Source: Pelomyxa schiedti (Eukaryota > Protista > Evosea). From it: a DNA stretch of 64,000 nt. The position numbers were made by a program, and so were the translations under genes. The notes beneath the pieces are model-generated. The model was not told the origin of the DNA, searched no databases, and worked only from the letters and a program-made list of their open reading frames with translations. Location of the stretch: contig JAHLWZ010000615.1 in assembly GCA_020536535.1 (NCBI GenBank), forward strand, positions 18,027 through 82,026. Reading direction: 5' to 3'. Every line of letters begins with the position of its first letter. Positions within the stretch are counted from its first letter, which is position 1. This document shows positions 49,736 through 63,459 of the stretch, piece by piece.

Positions 49736-51725
49736 ATGCACCGTAGCCGAGATGAAGTTCAACACGTTGTATGGGCGTCGCATGCGATGTGGACTGTAGT
49801 TCTGCCGAGCACATTCCTTGGGAGTGATGTCAGTTCAATATTTGTCATCGCTGAGGCTTTTTTCCCGGTGTGCGAGTGCACATCACGGATATTTTTACCC
49901 ACTGAGTTGTGACGAGATGTGTGACCTTTAAAAAAAAAAAAGTTAGTTGCATTGGTGTCAGATAAGGCGATTAATTTGACGGGGAGTCATGCCAAAGCCC
50001 TTGTGGCTTGTGCTGGTTCTGGGGCACCTCGTTGCCTTCATTGGCTGCTGGTGCACAATCCTCAAAAGAAGTACATCGCCATTTTTAATGTAAAGATAGA
50101 TACTCTTCTACATTTAGATAGCTGAACTCATTCACTCTTATCTTTCTAGACCGGGCACTGCTTACAGTTATGACTCAGTCTCGGTGGGTTTTCATGCTCT
50201 GGGTGCCGCTTGCAGGAGAGGATACAAAGATGTATGCGAGATGCTAGTCACTGAGTTTTCGCTATCCATGACTTCAGAAATGGCAGGAAATGTGGGTAGA
50301 CAGGCTGAACTTGAGTGGGCTGTGGACGCAGCCTGCGGATGTGGAGATGTTGCATTTTTACAGTGGTTAATATCTAGAATCCACATGGAAGTTCACATCC
50401 GCGGGGCAGTTTTAGCAAAGGCACTGTGCACTGCATGTTTGCATGGACAACTTGCCAATGCGAAATGGCTTGTTGCCCAGTTTCCTGTTACAAGTAACGA
50501 TCTACAACAAGCACTTCTCTCACGTATGGACATGTTTACCTGTACGTGTTTCAGTGGAAACGTGCAGCTGGCACGTTGGCTAATTGAAACTTTCAGTCCT
50601 GAACTTTTCCAAAAGAAGCTGAGCACAGATGCATTTTTTGCGCTCTGTGTTAACGGACAGCTGGAATTTGCCAAGTGGGTGGTTGAAGTCTTCAATATCA
50701 CTCACAATTCCTTCCAGAATTTTTTTCCTCAATTTGAAGAAGCTATGGACGTGGCTTGTAGTCATGGGCACTTGGAGTTTGCACAGTGGTTGGACCAGTT
50801 TTACTTGCCCATTGAACCAGACAAAGTACGCAGCCCGAGTGGAGCCCTTTGTAATGCCTGCCGAGGTGGCTACCTTGAAACATCCAAATGGCTAGTTCAG
50901 AGATATAACTTCACGCTCTCCGATATGACAGGTGAGGCACTACGTCGTGCATGTGCAAATGGTCACCTGGAAGTAGTAAAATGGATGAGAGACGAGTTTG
51001 AACTATCACATAAGGATATACCGCAACAACATGAGCTCTTTCTGAGGACTTGTGAGAAGAGTTCCAATATACCGATACTAGAATATCTAAGAGACTGTAT
51101 TGGCCTTGACCCTAGTGCTGTTCGAGAATGCAACAATGAAATAATCCGTTCCGCGTGTATCAGTGGCAGACTGGATGTTGCACAGTGCCTGGTTACAAAA
51201 TATGGGCTCTGCGCTGATGACATCAGGTCAAATGGCAACGAAGTTCTGCGCAATGCCTGTGAGAAAGGTGACATTAGACTTGCCAAGTGGGTGACCAGAA
51301 CCTTTGGACTTTGCATTTCAGATGCAAGGGCCTGCAACAACGACCCACTGCGAAAAGCTTGTGCAAATGGGCACCTTGATGTTGCAGTTTGGCTCAAGGA
51401 AACATTCTGCCTGACACCTGCCGATGCGAGGGAATTCTCAAATGATGCACTCCGCACTGTTTGTAAGGCTGGACGCTTGGATGTGGCCAAATGGCTGGCT
51501 CACACATTTGGACTCACTGCAGCTGATGCACGGGCTGTGAGGTGTGAAGCTCTGTGCAATGCGTGCATGGCTGGGCATTTGGATGTGGCTCAGTGGCTGG
51601 TTCATGCGTTTGGGCTTGTGAAGGAGGATATTGTTGATAGTGATGCTATCATATTCACACAACAAACGCACAGAGCCAACACACAGGACATACTCCAGTG
51701 GCTTGAGAGCCTCACACTCCCTTAA
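49736..51725 (+). CDS. Ankyrin-repeat protein
   Basis: More than 10 repeats of the type (AL)RxACxNGHLDVAxWL..xFGL, in a long terminal exon with short upstream exons. Confidence 0.88.
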
Positions 51726-52158: not shown

Positions 52159-52353
52159 CCTGTCTTGCCCTTGAGCAAGATGTCCACAGAGAGTTACCAC
52201 TTCTAGGAACACGGTAAGTCTGGGTCATCTACCCAAGAACACGGAACTGTAAGACTACCGGTCAACAGGACACCCCTTGTAGTCGTACTAAACTACAAGT
52301 CGTGAGTCTTGGATGAGACCATCGAAAGACATCTTGCTCAAGGGCAAGACAGG
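52159..52353. repeat. Perfect 26-bp inverted repeat (52159-52184 / 52328-52353) with a 143-bp spacer
   Basis: CCTGTCTTGCCCTTGAGCAAGATGTC and its exact reverse complement GACATCTTGCTCAAGGGCAAGACAGG. Confidence 0.95.
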
Positions 52354-52402
52354 TCCCCATCACTAGTGAAGTGTTTCATCACAACTCATCAAGAAAGAAC
52401 TG

Positions 52403-53820
52403 ATGAAATCGTTCTTACAACAACTGAATCCAATAACCGCCACGTCGTCACCCCCGACGTCAGCCACACGCCAACAGCCACAACCAACACAGCAGCAACA
52501 AAACCGCGTCCCACAATCGCCCCATCCCTCACCACAACAACAACCCCAGTCGGCGGCGCGTCAACCCGGCGCTGTTAATGCGTCTGTTGCGAGTGGTTCC
52601 GAGGGGGAATTGTGGGCGCAAATCCGTGGGCTGAAGCAGCAATTGGTGGCGAAGCAAGAGGCCCTTCAGTTGGCAAATGTCAAAATGTCTGTGCTCCAAG
52701 TTGGTGCCACACAAAACCCAAATACTATGTTTTTTTTTTCTTTAAAATTACTTTTCCTCTGTGTTACTTTTGTGCATTCTTAAGCCAATTAACTAGGGTA
52801 CTGTGGAGACAGTGACTCGTGACTTGAATACTCTGCAATTCAACACTACACAAGAATCAGTGGTATGCCTTTCTTCGTAGTATTGATGTTTAAACTCCCT
52901 TGTTTGATTAAGCTTCTGCTGTTTGCTGTCCTTCCTTATTTTAGTATTAGGAGATCGTGAATTTGCCAACCTACCACTCAACACATAAATCAGACTTTAA
53001 AGGATACTGTGCAGCAGCTTTCTGTGCAGCTGGCAGATAAAGATGCGGAAAACACTGAACTGAAAAAGAAAGTGTATGTTACAGAAATGTAAAACCACTC
53101 TGAGAAGCCAAAAAGATTTGACTTGGCAAGTAAATTGGAAATCTCTCGCCAAGGCAGCCCCACTTCACTGGATATTTGCAATGCTCCAGAATACGTAGAG
53201 GTTGCCAAAAGTATCAAATCGTTGTCTCACATGTTTGGGGTAGTTACTTAGAAAATGCGAATCTCTGGAGAAGTCTCTCTCTGAAGCTAGGCAAGAACAA
53301 CTTCTTCAGCAACAGGGACAAGCACCATCTGATTTAGATAGCCGGTTATCTCTCCTCAAACGGGAGAATGAAAACTTAGAAAGCCGTACCCTGTCCCATT
53401 TCATTATTTTCACCAATCGGACTTATCAGACACTAAGGAATGCAAATTTTAAGCCGCGAGGTTGCCACAGCCCGAGAAATTCGGCAGAATATAAGTTCAC
53501 TTAAGCATAGTCTGGATTTGGCAACAACAGAATTGGAAACCTTGCGGAATGAGAATACCGAACTTAAGCTCAAGACAGCGACACTGTCATCAGACGTAGA
53601 CACACTTGTTAGAGAAAAATTCGATGTAGAATTCCATTCCAGCACCAAAATACTCACAAAAAATAAATCCCACAAACAAAAGCTCACCACAGCCAAAGTT
53701 GATATGATTGCTGCAATTGAAGCAATGAGTGTTCAACTAAAAGAGGTGACTGATGAAAGAGACCAACTCAAAGAGCAGCATGACTCTCTGTCCTCAGTGA
53801 TCAAAAAGTTAATGCCCTGA
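52403..53820 (+). CDS. Coiled-coil protein, multi-exon
   Basis: Heptad-rich exons (LWAQIRGLKQQLVAKQEALQ, LETLRNENTELKLK, LKEVTDERDQLKEQHDSL). Confidence 0.7.
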
Positions 53821-53935: not shown

Positions 53936-56900
53936 ATGAGTGCGACACGTAAGGCTAATAAACAAGTCAGCAAGGGAACCACCGCGGAAACGACGGCGCC
54001 CGAAAAGATCTCTCCGCGAAAAAGAGCGCCGCCAAAGCCCGCTGCCTCACAAAGCGGAAGCGCGTCGGCCACGCAAGCTTCGAACAAAAGCGATGACGTC
54101 AATGCAACTCCGGTGCCTCCAGTGACCAAAAAACAATCCACCATGTCGAAATTCTTTTGCTCTGCGTCACAGCAGTCTCCCAGTGGGTCACAATGCACAA
54201 CATCCTCATCGACTTCTTCGCAGCCAACGAATTCCACTGCAGCTGCTAAGAATGTCTCTCGGTCTCCTCCTGCCAGTGGGGAAGATGCAGCTTCTTGCTC
54301 AGTATCATCAAAGACACCACCTTCAGGCTGTCAAACGACTTCCACTACGTCGAGCACATCATGCACATCATGTAGTCGTGTGAGTAACTCTGGCACAGAT
54401 AGCAATAATGCAAACACACCTTCACAATATCTGTCGGAGGAGAGAACAGTTGGGACTTCAAATAAACCAAATGCGCCGAGTTCCGATCCTCTTTCCACTG
54501 GTTCGGTCACCTCTTCAGGTTCAGCTGGTTCTGCTCCTTTCTCAAAAACAGTGAGATCTCTACCAGCACACAAGTGCCCTCATGGTAATATAATCTCCAG
54601 CCATAAATATCAAGTTGCATCGGGCCTCATTTTGTGTCAGTTGTTGTAAAATATGGATCGGAACCTGCTCTGATTCTTCCCAAGACTGAGTGTGCTCCTG
54701 GCGCACTAGAACTTCTTCGTTCCAAATTGAAAGCATTTTTTAAATTTGACAATGATGCTCAAGTTCCTATGTTTATATTTTACTCAGTCTTACACCATTT
54801 AGGACTTTGTGCTTCTTGATTTACAAAAAAACCCAGTTGCTCTAGAGTCGCTTGCTGATTTGCCAAATGGATCTGTGGTCCTAGCCTTCAAGTCGGAGGA
54901 CTTCTTAGGCCAAAGTATAAGATTGTTTTTCTCACTATCTTTTTAAAAAAAAAACAGAGGAACATTTGACATTGCATGAAATTGAAGTTGACACAACTCC
55001 AAGTACCAACATCCTTATAAAAGGCGGAGCTACAGGTCAGTAAGTTGATGAATGTTATCAATCTCATCAAGTTAGATTATAGTATAGCTGGTGCTATTGC
55101 AGAACTTGTAGATAATGCCATCCAAGCAGTAACGAAGTCGGAAGACCCAAAAACAATTAACATTGTTATCGCCTATGGACATGCCTCTGACCCTGTTGCC
55201 AGTCCCAAAATACAGGTGATTTGAGTGAAACTTCTTCAATTGCAAATTCCACACTAACACCGTTTCAAGGCAATACGGGTGCATGACACAGGAAATGGTA
55301 TGACTTACCAGGAATTGCACAACTTTCTTACGTGTGTAGCTAAAATGTCAGTTTATATATTGACATTGTGAACAGCCTTGGAGAAACTCAAGCCGACAAA
55401 CCAGGGTCTGCTTCTGATGACCACTTTGGGCAAATATCAAGGTTTGAATCAATCCAGCCTCCCTTTTTCCTGACCTTGATTTGCAGATATGGGGAGGGTG
55501 CAAAAAAAGCGGCATTTTTTCTTGGAAAGACTCTTTGTGTCAAAACAAAGCGTATGTAATTCCTGTTTCTCTGTACTTTTAATTGGCAGCAGAGAAAGAC
55601 TTGGGTGTGCTGTTTGAAACTCGTTTATCAGTCAGACACTTGGAGACCTCTGCAAGGCAAGACTGGAGAGCACTTATCTCCATCAAAGAAACTGAACACC
55701 CTGATCCACTGGGCCCGCACTACACATTGATTACAGTACGAGCCCTCGTTGGCAGCAGTTTTTGTGATTATAAGGCAGGTGAAACATGTTTCGATATCTT
55801 TGAAACGAGAAGAACTCAGTAATGTGGCATCCACCTTGGTCCAGATCTATTTTTTTTACCTTCATCCAGAGCATTTGTATTCATTTGTTCTTCACTTCAA
55901 ATAAATAAACAAATAAACCACAGGCCTTGTCAAACGAATCACTCTGCTTGTGACATACTTTTCAACAAAATCTGGTAGAAAATGTATCTTTTTACTCATT
56001 TTCCTTACTCTCGGTAGTCTAAGGGACACATCATCTGATCTAATCAGTCATCTCTTCACCCAAGCAGCTGAAAAGGAACCAAAACGATTTCAACTTCCGT
56101 TTCCACCCGGGCCCCCAGTTGAAATGTACTTGTTCTATTTCCCATATAAAGATGGGAGTGAAACGTCGTACTTGATGGGATCCACCTCAGAGCCTGGTGA
56201 CAAAAGGAAAAAGATCCAGCAAGACTCGGGGTTAATGGTATATTTCAACTACCGCGGTATTCCAGAGGCCACAATTCCCAGGTATTGGGTTTTTTCCTCT
56301 TGAGAACTTACAAGAGGTTTTAGACTGGGGTTCATGTCACCAGGCCGATACAAAAAAGTGAAAATTGAAGAAGTCTGGCTAAATCGAGTAAGAGGAATAA
56401 TTTTCCTGGACAGCAGGTTTCCTGTGACTCACAACAGTACTAATTACTTCCAATCTTCTTGCTTACCCATTAAACATCTAGAAATGCACATTTGTGTCAA
56501 TTCTGATCCCTTTCCAGAGTTCATTCAACTTAATCCAAGGGCAGTGGAAAAGGATTTCAGAGAGTGGCTAATATCCAGCCATGTAAGGTTGTTGTACTTC
56601 ACAGATTATTCCCGTTTCTAAAAAAAAAAAAATAGATATGATCAAGAGGTTGGTTCTATTTTCCAAGATTCGAAGTAACAAATATATGGGAAAAAAAATA
56701 TAGATAATCCCTATTGAGCCACTATATCACCCACAGCAGAACCGTACCACATGCAAAGGGTTTTCCAAAAATCAAGTCCAATACAATATTGGCACCCCTG
56801 TTGTGACTATTGCCAAAAACAGCAAAGTGCCACCCACAACAGGAAAAATCACTGAAATATTTTTCCTTGGCTCTCCTGATCACTCACAGAGTGAAATTCA

Positions 56901-59900
56901 AGTTAAGCTGGCAGTGTTAACTTGGAGGGATGAAGGGGAACAGGTTCGTTTTCTCTAAGTGACTTGCAAATACTAACGAAATGAACAAGGTTTTTGAAGC
57001 AAAGAAAATATCTCAAGCAATTGAGGATGCCAAGTATCAGCAATACCTTGAAAATCAGAAGAGGAGACTTCCAAGCCAAATAAAGGTACTCCTTCTTCTC
57101 TAAAAATGATATCCCTGACAAAGAGTTGTTAGCTTTACATGGGGGGTACCATGGATCTTCCCGACGAAGTTATTGAAGCCTCTCCAACAGCCTGCTTCTC
57201 CAGTATTGCTGTAGGTTTATGTAACGGCTTGCATAAAAACGGTAAGAGGTACTCATTGCCTTACACTTCTAAGAATGCACAGTGGAGCCTCCGATCATGG
57301 CGGCACATGAAGTGTCTGTGTGTGTCAAAACGTTCCCCTCCTTCTTCACTTACGAGCTATAGATTCATTATACTGTCTTTTTCAAAGATAAAGAAGTTGA
57401 GTCAAATGAGGCCCAGCATGAATCCTACTCTGCAGGAAGAATAACTTTCAAGAAAGTTGGTCTTTCAGCTCCACTTGTGAAAGCAGGCGATTATAGGATA
57501 GAATTTAGCTGTTCTTATAGCAATGTTCCTCCAGTTATTCACAAGTTTCGGGTCATCCCAGGTACATATAATAAATATATTATCCAATTTGAATATATAT
57601 GTGTGCATGCAGGTCCACTTGCACGTACTGTGCTATCTTTTTGCCACGATGGTGTACCTTCTGAGTTTTCTCTCCAGACTCCACTTCCTCCTTTGGAAAT
57701 CAGCTTGTGTGACGACTTTGACAATTCCATCACTGTTGAAGAGTCACATCTGGCAACTCTTACTATCAAGGTATTCGTTCCTTCATTTTTAGATTGTCTC
57801 TTTATATAATATCCACTGCCAGTGTGTTGGCACTTCTGAAAAAGAGGAAATTCCTGTTACTGTGCAAAGCTCTGAACTGCAGGTTTATATATTTTCCTGA
57901 AGAAAAAGGGTTTTACAAGACCAAGGATGATGGTTCAGCACATCTTGTCGTGGAACTTGGGCGCAGTAAATTAGCCAGTAATGAACACCAGTTAGAATTG
58001 TATCTTGGAGAAACAACTCCTGCAGTGATTCCCATTCACGTCGTTCCTGGTGAGGTGATAACTACTTTGTGAACCTAGCTCACCTGAACTCAGGCCCAAT
58101 TCACTCTTTGCAGTTCCAAGAGAGCAATATTTTTGAAAAACCATTTCCTGAAGAGAGTGTAATTCCAGGGTTGGTGCACTGTGAACTCGAATGGGTCAAT
58201 TAATTAGAAAAAGATTTTCAATTCGATTTGCTGATGAAGATGGGAACACCTTCAAACCTGCACCGACCCGAGTCAGCTCTAAACATAAAAAACACCATGT
58301 AGCTTCCATCCCCCATTCCGCCTCACTCTCATTTCTTGTAGACAAAGGGCAAGTCAAAAAGCAAATCCAGAAGTGAGGGTATAAGATTTACTCATTGTTC
58401 ACCGTTTTGACTGAAGGGAAGGTACAAGTGAAGATGAAAACAGGTCACAGGGGGACGAGACCGGGGATATGACTGTTACTGCTTCATCTCAGTTGATTGA
58501 AGGACAATCAGTGAGGTTGGTTGTTGGTTGTCAGTTGTTCCTCTTTTTGCTCATGCCACACCAAGTGTTTTGTTGAGTTCATCTGGAGTTTGCATGTTTG
58601 GGGACAAAAACTCTGGACTGCTCAGGACTAAGCATGTGGAACGGTCAATGTCTGCAGACCTTACTTTTTCTCTATCCAAAAATAAAGATGAAATGTTTTC
58701 TGCCACATTCACTCTGAAAGTGCACAGCCTCTGTGGCGCCTCTGGTATAGCACTATTAAATGAGGATGGCAACGAAATAGCCCATGGAAAAGGGTAAAAG
58801 CTTTTTCTTCTTCATCTCAACTTTCTCACATTTACATTTGCTTAGAGGCGATGTGCCGGTGCTCGTTCGTGTGTCTGCAATAAAGTGTGAACACCACTGG
58901 CGTGCTTCTGTTGATGCAGACGTGCCAAAGAGCTCGCAAAAAAAGGTTTTGCTGGGTGGAACTATTGAGACCAGCTGGAGTCATGATATTGTCAATTACG
59001 CCTATCCATCCCTTTCGGATTTGCCTCTGTTTGTTTCAGAAAAAGTAGGGAGGGGAGTCTTTATGTTGCATTTAACTAATTGGGTTTTCTAGGTCTGCAA
59101 GAGATACATGCACAAAGTTATCTTCGAAAATGAAAAAAACAAGAAACGCTTTCCTTTGTTGTTGGAAGTTGAAGTTCTGCCCGGACCACCAGTTTCTTTT
59201 CATCTCAAGCCTGAATGTCAAGAAGTACAGATAGCTCCCATTTTTCTTTTTTTTATTATGCATCTTCATAATATGTGCACTCATAGTTTCACTGTGGCTC
59301 AGAGTTTAAGTTGTCCATATTCCTTCATGATGAGGCCAGCAACGTTGTTGTAGCTCATGATTCTCTGGATTGCAACCTCGAGGAGATAACTCCAAACATT
59401 GAGGTGCAATCAAGTTTCTCTTCCTCTAATACCCACAAAACTATTCAGGTCCTCTCCTCCTCCCCAGATAGAGTAATAAAACTCTCCGGACTCAGCATTG
59501 AGCCGTTTGAGGGTGATCACTTCTGTGCAAAGCTGTCTATCATTGGTCTTGATGATGTTTGTATTATCGTGAGGGATCCGAAAGGTTCTAACTCCTCTCC
59601 CTTCAGCCTGATTTACATTGTTTCAGGGTCTCTGCACGAGGCTAGAAAAGAAATAAAACTTCTACCAGGTTAATTTACACATACGATTCTCTTTCTTCCT
59701 AACATCAGGCATTCCACTCGGCACAATCAGGCTCGTTTCGCTGCTTGAAAGTGAATGGAAGTAAACATCTCTCACTCAAAAAGAGTACAAGTGACTACAT
59801 TGATTCCCTGGAAATCACTTCTTGTGATGCTTTTGACAATATTGTTCCGGTTATCGATCATTTGGAAACATCTCGTTCCACTGATGTCTAAGTACAGCTT

Positions 59901-62627
59901 CAGGGTACTGTGATCGATTCTACTTGGGCAGATCCCGAGACTCCACCCTTCAAGTTTCCACATGGGTGGGTACCACTCTCTTTCGAATCTCACCAAATGA
60001 CAGGAAACAAATGATTGATGGAAAACTAAAACTTACCAACTTACAAGTTAACGGAAAGCCAGGAGAATACAAGTTAACATTGACTCCTCGAAATGTCAAT
60101 GCAGAGGTTTCCCTTTCTATCAGTGAATGCTATTTTCCTTAAAACAATTTAGGAGGCAGTTATTAAACTATTTCTGGAAGCGGGGAACTTCCCTACAGAG
60201 ATTAAAATTTTAGAAGCCCCAGATCATGGAAAAGTTGGTCAAATTCTCGATGTGCTCGTTGTCCAAGTTCTTTCAACTACGGGGTATTACAAGTGATTCC
60301 TTCTGTCGCTGCCAGCTAATTTGCATTATTACCCTCAGGATGGCATTGGAAGTACCAACGAAAGAGTTAACAGCAAGGTTTTCTGCTAATAATGAGTTTC
60401 CTTGTTCAGCCTTCGAAACTGGAGTTTGCTCCTACCATTTTACTGGTGAGTTTGGCCTTCCTTCACCCATTGAATTTACCCAGAAAAAAAAAAAATGAAA
60501 AGATCTTATTTGCCCTCCCACTGCCGACACATATCCACTGGAAATCGTTTACAAAAGTCCATCAGTAACCCTCACAAAAACTATTACATTGATTGCTGAA
60601 TCTGGTAGGAGACTTGACTTTTTTCTTCTTCTTACGACATACCATAGGAACCCCACAGCACATGGTATTGGTACCACAAGCAGCCGTGAAGTCATCTGTT
60701 TCTCTCAGTGGCTCGTCTGAAGATCGCCAATTAGTTTCCGATCTCGTTGTCGAGTTACATGATAAACATGGCAATATATGCTCCCTCGTAGGTGGTGCAT
60801 TAGATGTGTCTGTCACTGGGCTACATGCTCCAAAATTCCAGGTTTATCTCACACAAATCCACTTCGAGTATTTGACAAGTTCGAACACAGGAAAATACCC
60901 AATTCCCTATTGACAGTGGACGTGCCTCAATTCCCTCCCTGACAGTTGATTCATCCAGAGCTGTTCCCAATGGGACTTACGTGATGAAACTACAAGCTAC
61001 TTGCAACGGCAATGCTTTAGTTCAGGAGATACAATTCCTTCTAAGCAACGGTACCTTTCTTTTCAGAGCATATCTTCACCAACATTTTGTTAAGATATTG
61101 CCTGCACCCCTGCCCAAAGTCAACAAGCTGAAAAGATGAAATTACGACAGCAATTGGATGCAATCAATCTGAGAATATCAGAGTATGCCAGTGGTTTTTA
61201 CCCCCCAGTTGTGAACTGAAAATATTTTCTCAGGTTGAAAGCACAAATATCACCGATTGACACAGGGGTGACCTCAACAGTGCAAAACACCCTGGCCACA
61301 ATCAAGCAAGGAGCGCCCAGGGATATGGATATTGTTGTTGAGGCAGGTGACTTGGTTATGTGGCTTTTATTTAATATTTGTAGAATGTTGACGCCTCTGG
61401 TCTCCCTGAAATTCATCATAAACTACAACAAAGACTACAGGAAGTTACTTCATCAGTAAGTTTTTTCCCCCCAATGTTGAAGTATAACACCATTTTTATA
61501 GGCTCGGAGACTTCCAATTTTACATCAGACACAGATCATAAGCGAACTTGCCAGCGACCTTGCACAAAAGTGTGTTGGACCTTGCATGAAATTATCTCTT
61601 ATTTTTAACAAAACAGAGGAGAAAATTCCGGCATTATTGGCGCTTTGAGGGAGCTCATTTTTGTTGAAAGTGAAAAGGAATCGCGGGCCATAACGAAATT
61701 TCTGGGCCCGCTTGTGGATTCCGTTATCATCTGTGACAATGACGTGGCCATGTCATACTATGAAAAGTGTGATATGAACTTTCCTAGTTGTAAGCCACCA
61801 ACCTTCATTCAACCAGGTACAAAAACTTGGAGGAGGGAGGTAATTTGATAGTGCTCCCACCAGTTGCAATGCACAGGTTTTCTTCCATAATTGTCTCCCC
61901 ACCTTTTTTTAATCATGCAGTTCAAAGTCCCTGAAACTTCCTCCTGGCTGCCCAACCACTGGGTTTATTGATTTCGCAGTAAATAGGTTGGGACGTAAAA
62001 TCTGAGGTGGTTCTTAGTATTATTAAGATGCCAACTCCGGAAGAAGCAAGAGCACTTACGGGATTCCTTGCTGATGACTTTGTTTCAAACGGCTGCCATA
62101 GTTGACACAATGACCAACGCACTCGCTATGAGATCAGTACTACAGAAGAAATTTAAGAAGGATTTGTCTGCCTACATTGTTGTAGACCAGTGTGAAGTAC
62201 TTATGAAAGGTACCCTCCATTTCAGTCTCTTTTACTTTACTTACGACGTGGTCTTTCCTTAGGAATGGTTCCTCTAGGTGCTGCAAGGCAAGAAGCACCA
62301 TCAGTCTTTGGTCAGCTTCCATTGTCTGAATTACCGCTCTTTCAGTGGCTGAGCTCCTCTATTGTACGTTTCTGCAAATCTTTACAAAAAAAACATTCAC
62401 CCCAACACCAGGAACAATTGGAAGCGCTACAAAATAAGGTCAATGAAGATGCTTCTAAATCCCACAGCCAAGAACAAATTGCCGACTTGGAGGCCGAAGC
62501 CAAACTGATTCAGAGCAAACTAGACGACGCAACAGATGCGGACATGGCAGACATCCCTCCAAAAAAACCTAACACCCCACCAAAAAAAACGAAACGCGGA
62601 GGCAAGGGGCACTCCAGAAAAACATGA
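53936..62627 (+). CDS. SMCHD1: SMCHD1-like chromatin protein (UBL, GHKL ATPase, transducer, BAH/Ig-like repeats, coiled coil, SMC hinge), dozens of short introns
   Basis: AIAELVDNA (N box), VHDTGNGM (G1), ISRYGEGAKKAAFFLG (G2), IYFFYLHP, YFPYKDGSET, YFNYRGIP, NRVRGIIFLDSRFPVTHNK and FREWLISSHVRYDQE. Repeated LxDxxxN Ig-like units follow. The hinge is GIIGALRELIFVESEKESRAITKFLGPLVDSVII…FAVNRL…LFQTAAIVDT…VFGQLP. Confidence 0.88.
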
Positions 62628-62668: not shown

Positions 62669-63459
62669 TTAATCAACAATGAAACGAATAGTAAGGGCAT
62701 CCTGCACTGCTCTTGCGTCTGTAAATCCCTTTGTAAAGGTGAGGATGTTCATGTAGATCATAGAAAGGTAGAGAAAGTGTGCCATACATCCTTAAACTGA
62801 TCGAATGACATTTTTTCACAGCCGCGCAAATACTCATCGGCAATTGAGTTTAGTCTCTCTGTTCCAAGGTGTTTTCCAGTTACCCTATCCAAAGTGTAAA
62901 GGTTACCAGTGAGATTAATGTCACGCCATACATTAGAAGAACGGTTATGAGGTCCTTTCTAGATATGAATCCATCGCCATCTTCGTCGTAAATAGTAAAC
63001 ATCACTGGTGGGTTCAGGTTCACATCACAGTCAGCAAATAAAAAAGTGGTCCTTAGCCCCCCAGAAGAATGCAACACACACATTTGAGTTTTTCTTCAGC
63101 TCTGGTGTTTGGGTGAAAAACAGCCAGAGTCTCAGCGAATTGCTTGAAGTTCACAAAACCGTCCTTGGCGGGGAACAAAGCGACCAATCTGCTGCACAGA
63201 GGGTTCATCGCGAACTCGGGAATGTGCATCAGATCTGATGGATTCACGGTCCCTCGGTGCTCTCTGTCGATGCGACAAAACCGCTTGTACAGCCGTCGTA
63301 TTTCCTTTGTCGAATCTGTGCAGGACGGAGGTACCCAAACACAGGCAGTGAGGTGACGGTATTGTGGTGTGCAGGTGGCGATGATACCCTACATTGTGGA
63401 CATGACGACAAGATCTCCTCCACTTCCTCTGCCTGCAACGCCGACTCCTCCAACCCCAT
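62669..63459 (-). CDS. Calcineurin B / CHP-like EF-hand protein
   Basis: MG start (possible myristoylation), EIRRLYKRFCRID, IPEFAMNPLCSRLV, EEKLK and EF-hand IYDEDGDGFISRKDL. Confidence 0.92.

What the first reader, a model, noticed from the sequence alone, without database searches (positions are those of the whole stretch)
53936..62627. Full-length SMCHD1-type epigenetic silencer hidden in a protist genome
Seen: after stitching many short exons, one reading frame runs through an N-terminal ubiquitin-like segment (about 54640-54910), a complete GHKL ATPase (ELVDNA near 55100, DTGNGM near 55290, YGEGAK near 55490), SMCHD1-style transducer motifs, a BAH-like exon (56704-56943), a long run of Ig-like units, a coiled coil and a C-terminal SMC hinge (about 61620-62330). 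Established: this GHKL+hinge architecture defines SMCHD1, studied mainly in mammals (X inactivation, D4Z4/FSHD2, repeat silencing), with plant GMI1 as a relative. Inference: a colinear full-length orthologue in an apparent amoebozoan implies an ancient SMCHD1 silencing or repair system in unicellular eukaryotes, acting without X inactivation or imprinting. I cannot tell whether protist orthologues are already reported.
Basis: partly seen in the sequence, partly recalled or inferred. Interest (0 to 1): 0.85.

Follow-up and report, generated by a model that had tools for sequence, protein, structure and literature searches.

The report
SMCHD1 chromatin ATPase gene in amoeba
The anaerobic amoeba Pelomyxa schiedti has a complete counterpart of SMCHD1, the DNA-clamping protein that silences the inactive X chromosome in mammals; the gene is real but already carries that name in GenBank and has counterparts in many amoebae and algae, so its main value is that Dictyostelium could be used to test what the protein did before animals existed.

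Summary
Observation confirmed. The genome matches the Pelomyxa schiedti assembly (52.4 Mb, 5337 scaffolds). Window 53936-62627 is one gene of about 50 exons with short introns; all 10 RNA-seen junctions match the model. The deposited protein KAH3760375.1 (2028 aa) is already named SMCHD1. Its GHKL+S5 module is SMCHD1-type: a family profile hits human SMCHD1 at E 2e-72 against 1e-6 for the best MORC, and the model aligns at Z 33 against 22. Catalytic E261, N265 and switch K586 are kept. BAH, an Ig-like array, coiled coils and an SMC hinge follow in the human order; the ubiquitin-like domain is unproven. It is single copy and separate from four MORC loci. It is not a hidden one-off: colinear homologues occur in seven dictyostelid genera or species groups, Physarum, Planoprotostelium, a chrysophyte and probable green algae, and Iyer 2008 already called this fusion an ancient eukaryotic lineage. 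I found no paper on the amoebozoan copies. 'Silencer' is inferred only; a repair role like plant GMI1 is a close rival. No single transcript joins ATPase to hinge, and no animal or plant sequence was available for the tree. The scan had no earlier SMCHD1 note.

The parts
53936..62627 (+). SMCHD1-family gene; 50 exons in the deposited model (start 54143), 51 in my revised reading (start 53936, about 2.1 k aa)
   Evidence: protein P0001 = KAH3760375.1
53936..54584 (+). Exon 1: basic then Ser/Thr-rich low-complexity N-terminal tail; in-frame ATG at 53936 adds 69 residues to the deposited model
   Evidence: start choice is inference
54641..54977 (+). Candidate ubiquitin-like domain (P0001 148-232)
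   Evidence: strand-strand-helix-strand-strand pattern at pLDDT 50-60; alignable in dictyostelids and Planoprotostelium; partial profile overlap with the human UBL; no stand-alone hit
54978..55930 (+). GHKL ATPase (233-445): E261, N265, D304-x-G-x-G, G343-x-G-x-K347
   Evidence: HATPase_c_3 E 4e-15
55931..56648 (+). SMCHD1-type S5/transducer domain with switch lysine K586
   Evidence: SMCHD1_S5 E 5e-18; single genome match; equivalence to human K525 from alignments and paper
56636..56648 (+). 13-nt micro-exon missing from the deposited model; restores the conserved H-x(1-3)-D-Q motif
   Evidence: not covered by RNA
56704..57061 (+). BAH domain; near-invariant K694 (57005-57007) is the likely counterpart of DNA-binding human K668
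   Evidence: Z 9-11 to AIPP3, EBS, Rsc2, DNMT1, ORC1 BAH domains; K694; counterpart by residue offset only
57062..57617 (+). First Ig-like domain (IGL-1 position)
   Evidence: Z about 9 to Ig-like sandwiches, model 570-690
57618..61099 (+). Array of Ig-like domains (at least five well modelled; residues about 940-1215 poorly modelled)
   Evidence: 10 RNA-confirmed introns lie in IGL-1 and this array
61109..61449 (+). Short coiled-coil helices before the hinge
61529..62312 (+). SMC hinge domain (about 1758-1940)
   Evidence: family profile hits mouse SMCHD1 hinge E 2e-11, DMS3 E 1e-9; model Z 15.2 DMS3, 13-15 canonical hinges, 10.3 SMCHD1 hinge; SMC_hinge on the single exon only E 0.05
62334..62627 (+). 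C-terminal coiled coil and basic tail (possible nuclear localisation signal), stop TGA 62625-62627
   Evidence: signal is inference

Best explanation
A vertically inherited, single-copy SMCHD1-family gene of Pelomyxa schiedti. Shown here: one spliced, transcribed gene with GHKL ATPase, SMCHD1-type transducer, BAH, Ig-like array, short coiled coils and SMC hinge, with intact catalytic residues. Inferred from the mammalian protein: it homodimerises through the hinge, binds DNA at the hinge and at BAH plus IGL-1, and its two ATPase heads close on ATP and open on hydrolysis, so the dimer bridges and compacts chromatin. The most likely cellular job (about 50%) is compaction of repeat or transposon heterochromatin marked by HP1, reached without an LRIF1 adaptor; a role in double-strand-break repair (about 35%) may be the main job or may coexist. 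The confidence given is for family identity plus clamp mechanism, not for the cellular job.
For: Profile of protist homologues: human SMCHD1 ATPase E 2e-72 over 438 positions, next MORC4 1e-6. Model to 6MW7 Z 33.0, rmsd 3.1 over 350 residues; best MORC Z 22.5. Hinge, BAH and Ig matches. Intronless single-frame homologues carry both ATPase and hinge (P0003, L002). Tree: eukaryotic SMCHD1-like rows form one clade (SH-aLRT 99) apart from metagenomic GHKL outgroups; Pelomyxa falls with the amoebozoan rows (86). Genome has an HP1-like chromo plus chromo-shadow gene, four MORC loci and an intron-bearing cytosine methyltransferase. Mechanism papers: PMC7458401, PMC4628070, 10.1101/2025.07.08.663435, 10.64898/2026.02.05.704097.
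Against: No functional data. No transcript spans the gene, and some RNA contigs over 59753-60434 are unspliced. No LRIF1 or Pre-SET match in the genome (both weak negatives). The Pelomyxa protein is a long branch (2.68) at 22-27% identity to its relatives, and keeps only part of the hinge glycine motif (G1924, G1929). The hinge model scores higher to DMS3 and canonical hinges than to mouse SMCHD1. No animal or plant sequences were in the tree, which is the quick search only.
Confidence: 0.9

Rival explanations
1. Same protein, but its main job is double-strand-break repair, as for Arabidopsis GMI1; silencing is an animal specialisation that came with LRIF1 and Polycomb recruitment.
For: GMI1 acts in somatic recombination and mammalian SMCHD1 also goes to breaks (PMC4628070, PMC4004971, PMC5651269); no LRIF1 match here; repair is the one role reported in both plants and animals.
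Against: HP1-like, MORC and methyltransferase genes are present; purified SMCHD1 compacts DNA without partners; the domain string is as long as the animal protein.
Confidence: 0.35
2. A MORC, sacsin or Hsp90-like GHKL gene lying next to an unrelated hinge gene, joined only by gene prediction.
For: No RNA contig joins the two ends; the hinge alone is below the Pfam cut-off in this protein.
Against: Uniform short introns with no intergenic gap; colinear exon matches to full-length homologues; single-frame homologues with both ends; a transcript-derived Physarum protein runs from transducer to hinge; SMCHD1 far outscores MORC.
Confidence: 0.03
3. Contamination or recent transfer from an animal, plant or food organism.
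For: Single-cell assembly from sediment; long branch in the tree.
Against: Intron size and density fit the host (PMC8887013); the contig carries host-like neighbours; closest full-length matches are dictyostelid and myxogastrid proteins; groups with amoebozoan rows.
Confidence: 0.02

Closest known systems
Mammalian SMCHD1 (PDB 6MW7 ATPase, 6N64 hinge)
   Same: Domain order, length near 2000-2100 aa, catalytic E/N, switch lysine, SMCHD1_S5 domain, BAH then Ig-like array, short coils around a C-terminal hinge.
   Different: About 20% identity; extra 150-220 residue low-complexity N-tail; amoebozoan signature THNKMH in place of STNKLT; hinge glycines only partly kept; no LRIF1 partner detected; no X inactivation or imprinting context known.
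Amoebozoan orthologues already in databases (Cavenderia DFA_03409, Heterostelium PPL_00513, Tieghemostelium DLAC_09445, Polysphondylium CYY_000829, three Dictyostelium species, Synstelium, Physarum, Planoprotostelium PRP81795.1)
   Same: Colinear over the whole length, 22-27% identity, E down to 1e-122; same signature motifs.
   Different: Pelomyxa copy is the most diverged; most others are deposited as hypothetical proteins or inside fused gene models.
Arabidopsis GMI1 and DMS3
   Same: GMI1 has GHKL plus SMC hinge (PMC5651269); DMS3 hinge is the top structural match of the hinge region (Z 15.2).
MORC1-4 / plant MORCs
   Same: GHKL+S5 clamp fold (Z 20-22).
   Different: Different S5 family (Morc6_S5 matches four other loci, not this one); no CW finger found; MORCs lack the Ig array and hinge.

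Membership tests
SMCHD1/GMI1 family | N-terminal GHKL ATPase with catalytic Glu, Mg-binding Asn and G-boxes | tested here: met
   E261, N265, D304/G306/G308, G343/G345/K347
SMCHD1/GMI1 family | SMCHD1-type S5 transducer with switch lysine | tested here: met
   PF22899 65.8 bits against cut-off 27; K586 aligns with the human STNK lysine
SMCHD1/GMI1 family | C-terminal SMC hinge between short coiled coils | tested here: met
   below the Pfam cut-off in this protein itself, above it in homologue P0003
SMCHD1/GMI1 family | ATPase and hinge in one polypeptide | tested here: met
   continuous model with uniform introns, colinear exon matches, single-frame homologues; direct transcript proof is lacking
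SMCHD1 (animal type) | BAH domain followed by Ig-like linker | tested here: met
SMCHD1 (animal type) | N-terminal ubiquitin-like domain | tested here: inconclusive
   right place, size and secondary-structure pattern, low confidence model; no independent hit
SMCHD1 (animal type) | Orthology by tree with animal SMCHD1 and plant GMI1 | not testable with these tools
   three homology searches and one library search returned no animal or land-plant sequence
SMCHD1 (animal type) | Hinge homodimer, ATP hydrolysis, DNA compaction, silencing | not testable with these tools
   needs experiments
SMCHD1 (animal type) | LRIF1-HP1 loading route | tested here: inconclusive
   HP1-like gene present; LRIF1 no match, with no positive control
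MORC family proper | Morc6_S5-type transducer and MORC-closest ATPase | tested here: not met
   PF17942 matches contigs C1148, C873, C240, C498 only; SMCHD1 outscores MORC by 66 orders of magnitude in E
Canonical SMC1-6 | Split ABC ATPase with central hinge and long coiled coils | tested here: not met
   ATPase is GHKL, hinge is terminal, coils are about 50-80 residues

The most novel reading that the evidence does not exclude
SMCHD1-mediated heterochromatin compaction is older than animals: amoebozoan SMCHD1 silences repeats together with HP1, without LRIF1, Xist or imprinting, and the uncharacterised Dictyostelium orthologue offers a haploid knockout system for the ancestral mechanism.
Probability: 0.4. 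Interest if true: 0.6.

Novelty: already known. Interest (0 to 1): 0.27.

Why it matters
The gene itself is ordinary database content. What is under-used is its spread: full-length copies in four amoebozoan lineages, a stramenopile and probable green algae, with the catalytic residues and probably the BAH DNA-binding lysine kept. The SMCHD1 papers I could search treat it as a mammalian silencer with one plant relative. A Dictyostelium orthologue makes the question 'silencing or repair first?' testable, and the alignment marks which residues, including positions of human disease variants, have been fixed for over a billion years.

Tried and rejected
Operator rule on spliced models: external searches were run exon by exon by reference and then with the deposited protein id P0001; my revised joined model (upstream start plus micro-exon) was not sent to any search or fold tool, so that joined step is left out. 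Splice paths were only computed in scripts for coordinates. The unguided splice search was wrong at several exons and was replaced by the RNA-consistent deposited model. P0002 and P0016 are spurious or generic Ig matches and were dropped. The metagenome scan returned mostly prokaryote-like GHKL proteins; only L011, L013, L014, L022, L023 belong to the family. Atlas searches gave generic MORC/GHKL and hinge clusters. Profile searches for the UBL and BAH segments found nothing significant. Foldseek on the 1160-residue model gave only generic Ig-repeat proteins. Bohmdorfer 2011 and Iyer 2008 (Int J Parasitol) are not held, so their taxon lists could not be read and may already include Dictyostelium. 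Ten literature searches found no paper on amoebozoan SMCHD1.
Full report
Source. The window lies on contig C615 of a 52,367,397-base, 5337-contig assembly. These figures match the Pelomyxa schiedti single-cell genome (52.4 Mb, 5337 scaffolds, 7.4 introns per gene; PMC8887013), and the encoded protein is deposited as KAH3760375.1 of that species.

The observation. Exon-by-exon Pfam scans gave HATPase_c_3 on two exons, SMCHD1_S5 on two, and a weak SMC_hinge match on 61621-61758. A library search with one transducer exon returned the deposited 2028-residue protein P0001. It maps to 50 exons from 54143 to the stop at 62625-62627, with 49 introns, 48 of them 38-62 nt. RNA contigs from three runs of one sample show ten spliced junctions between 57086 and 59448, all identical to model introns. 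No contig covers the hinge, and the ATPase was outside the 6 kb that could be laid, so one transcript from end to end is not shown. As a control that does not depend on the model's own sequence, a profile made only from homologues matched 20 single exons at E<0.05, from ATPase to hinge, in colinear order (rho 0.99).

Two likely corrections to the deposited model. Its only long intron (56583-56736, 154 nt) removes a motif present in every homologue. A 13-nt micro-exon (56636-56648) and an acceptor at 56703 give two normal introns of 48 and 55 nt and restore the motif at the right spacing. An in-frame ATG at 53936 adds 69 basic residues. Neither is confirmed by RNA.

What it is. P0001 scores 65.8 bits on SMCHD1_S5 and 56.4 on HATPase_c_3. 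A profile of eight protist homologues matches human SMCHD1 (6MW7) at E 2e-72 and the best MORC at 1e-6. The AlphaFold model of residues 145-845 (mean pLDDT 74) aligns to 6MW7 at Z 33.0, rmsd 3.1 over 350 residues, against 22.5 for MORC3. Residues 620-715 match BAH domains at Z 9-11 and 714-835 match Ig-like sandwiches. The model of 836-1995 (mean pLDDT 66) is a string of beta-sandwiches, then helices, then an SMC hinge (Z 15.2 to DMS3, 13-15 to condensin, cohesin and bacterial hinges, 10.3 to mouse SMCHD1). The hinge profile hits the mouse SMCHD1 hinge at E 2e-11. E261, N265 and K586 correspond to human E147, N151 and K525, the catalytic base, Mg ligand and switch lysine. K694 is nearly invariant and sits 22 residues before an invariant proline at the BAH/Ig boundary, the same offset as human K668 to P690; K668 is the main BAH DNA contact. 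That equivalence rests on offset, not on an alignment. The ubiquitin-like domain is plausible but unproven. The gene is single copy. Four MORC loci lie elsewhere.

How widespread. Homologues with the same architecture were recovered from Synstelium, Cavenderia, Heterostelium, Tieghemostelium, Polysphondylium, three Dictyostelium species, one unnamed EukProt entry, Physarum and Planoprotostelium; from the chrysophyte Chromulina; and from GC-rich intronless metagenomic contigs that I take for green algae by context, without proof. Full-length BLAST to dictyostelid proteins runs across about 1800 residues at 25% identity. A quick tree puts all these in one clade (SH-aLRT 99), with the amoebozoan rows and two unassigned metagenomic proteins together (86) and Pelomyxa on a long branch among them. 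Animal and land-plant sequences were not returned by any search, so orthology to SMCHD1 rather than GMI1 rests on profile and structure scores. All rows were kept; the careful tree did not finish.

How it likely works. By inference from mammalian work: a hinge-linked homodimer with flexible Ig arms, two DNA-binding sites per subunit, and ATP-gated heads, which bridges and compacts DNA. The genome has an HP1-like gene, MORCs and an intron-bearing cytosine methyltransferase, so a heterochromatin setting exists; LRIF1 was not detected (weak negative). I put repeat silencing at about 50%, break repair as main job at about 35%, and other structural roles at the rest. Nothing in the sequence decides this.

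Comparison with what is known. It works like SMCHD1 and passes every sequence and fold test of family membership that could be run, except the inconclusive ubiquitin-like domain. GenBank already names it so, and UniRef labels several dictyostelid copies by their SMCHD1 domain. [quoted passage not shown] Ten literature searches found no study of the amoebozoan genes, and two likely sources could not be read.

Verdict. Real, correctly identified, already catalogued. Interest 0.27, carried by the untested Dictyostelium orthologue rather than by this locus.

Noticed in passing
window 56583-56736: Deposited model KAH3760375.1 probably misses a 13-nt micro-exon and 33 nt of the next exon.
   Followed up: partly
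window 59753-60434: RNA contigs here are unspliced across several introns and end near genomic A-runs; may be pre-mRNA, intron retention or DNA primed by oligo-dT.
   Followed up: no
L005 (G000:C253 about 110200-111500): Intron-bearing HP1-like gene with chromodomain and chromo-shadow domain.
   Followed up: partly
G000 contigs C1148, C873, C240, C498: Four MORC-type loci (HATPase_c_3 plus Morc6_S5), a large set for an amoeba.
   Followed up: no
G000:C1048:11181-12555: Intron-bearing cytosine methyltransferase; three more intronless matches on C902, C151, C829.
   Followed up: no
P0013 (PRP81795.1) and P0005: Planoprotostelium SMCHD1 is hidden in a 3633-aa model named acyl-CoA ligase (SET and ligase domains in front); the Synstelium model has a GNAT prefix. 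Both look like fused gene predictions.
   Followed up: partly
L002, L003 (P0003, P0004): Intronless full-length SMCHD1-like genes from an unidentified eukaryote in metagenomes; they group with Planoprotostelium.
   Followed up: partly
window 50184-51725 +: Intronless 513-aa ankyrin-repeat ORF.
   Followed up: partly
window about 52300-53820 +: Spliced coiled-coil gene ending only 115 nt before the SMCHD1 start codon.
   Followed up: no
window about 62700-63400 -: Convergent EF-hand gene, calcineurin-B-like by eye; EF-hand Pfam match on 62880-63083.
   Followed up: partly
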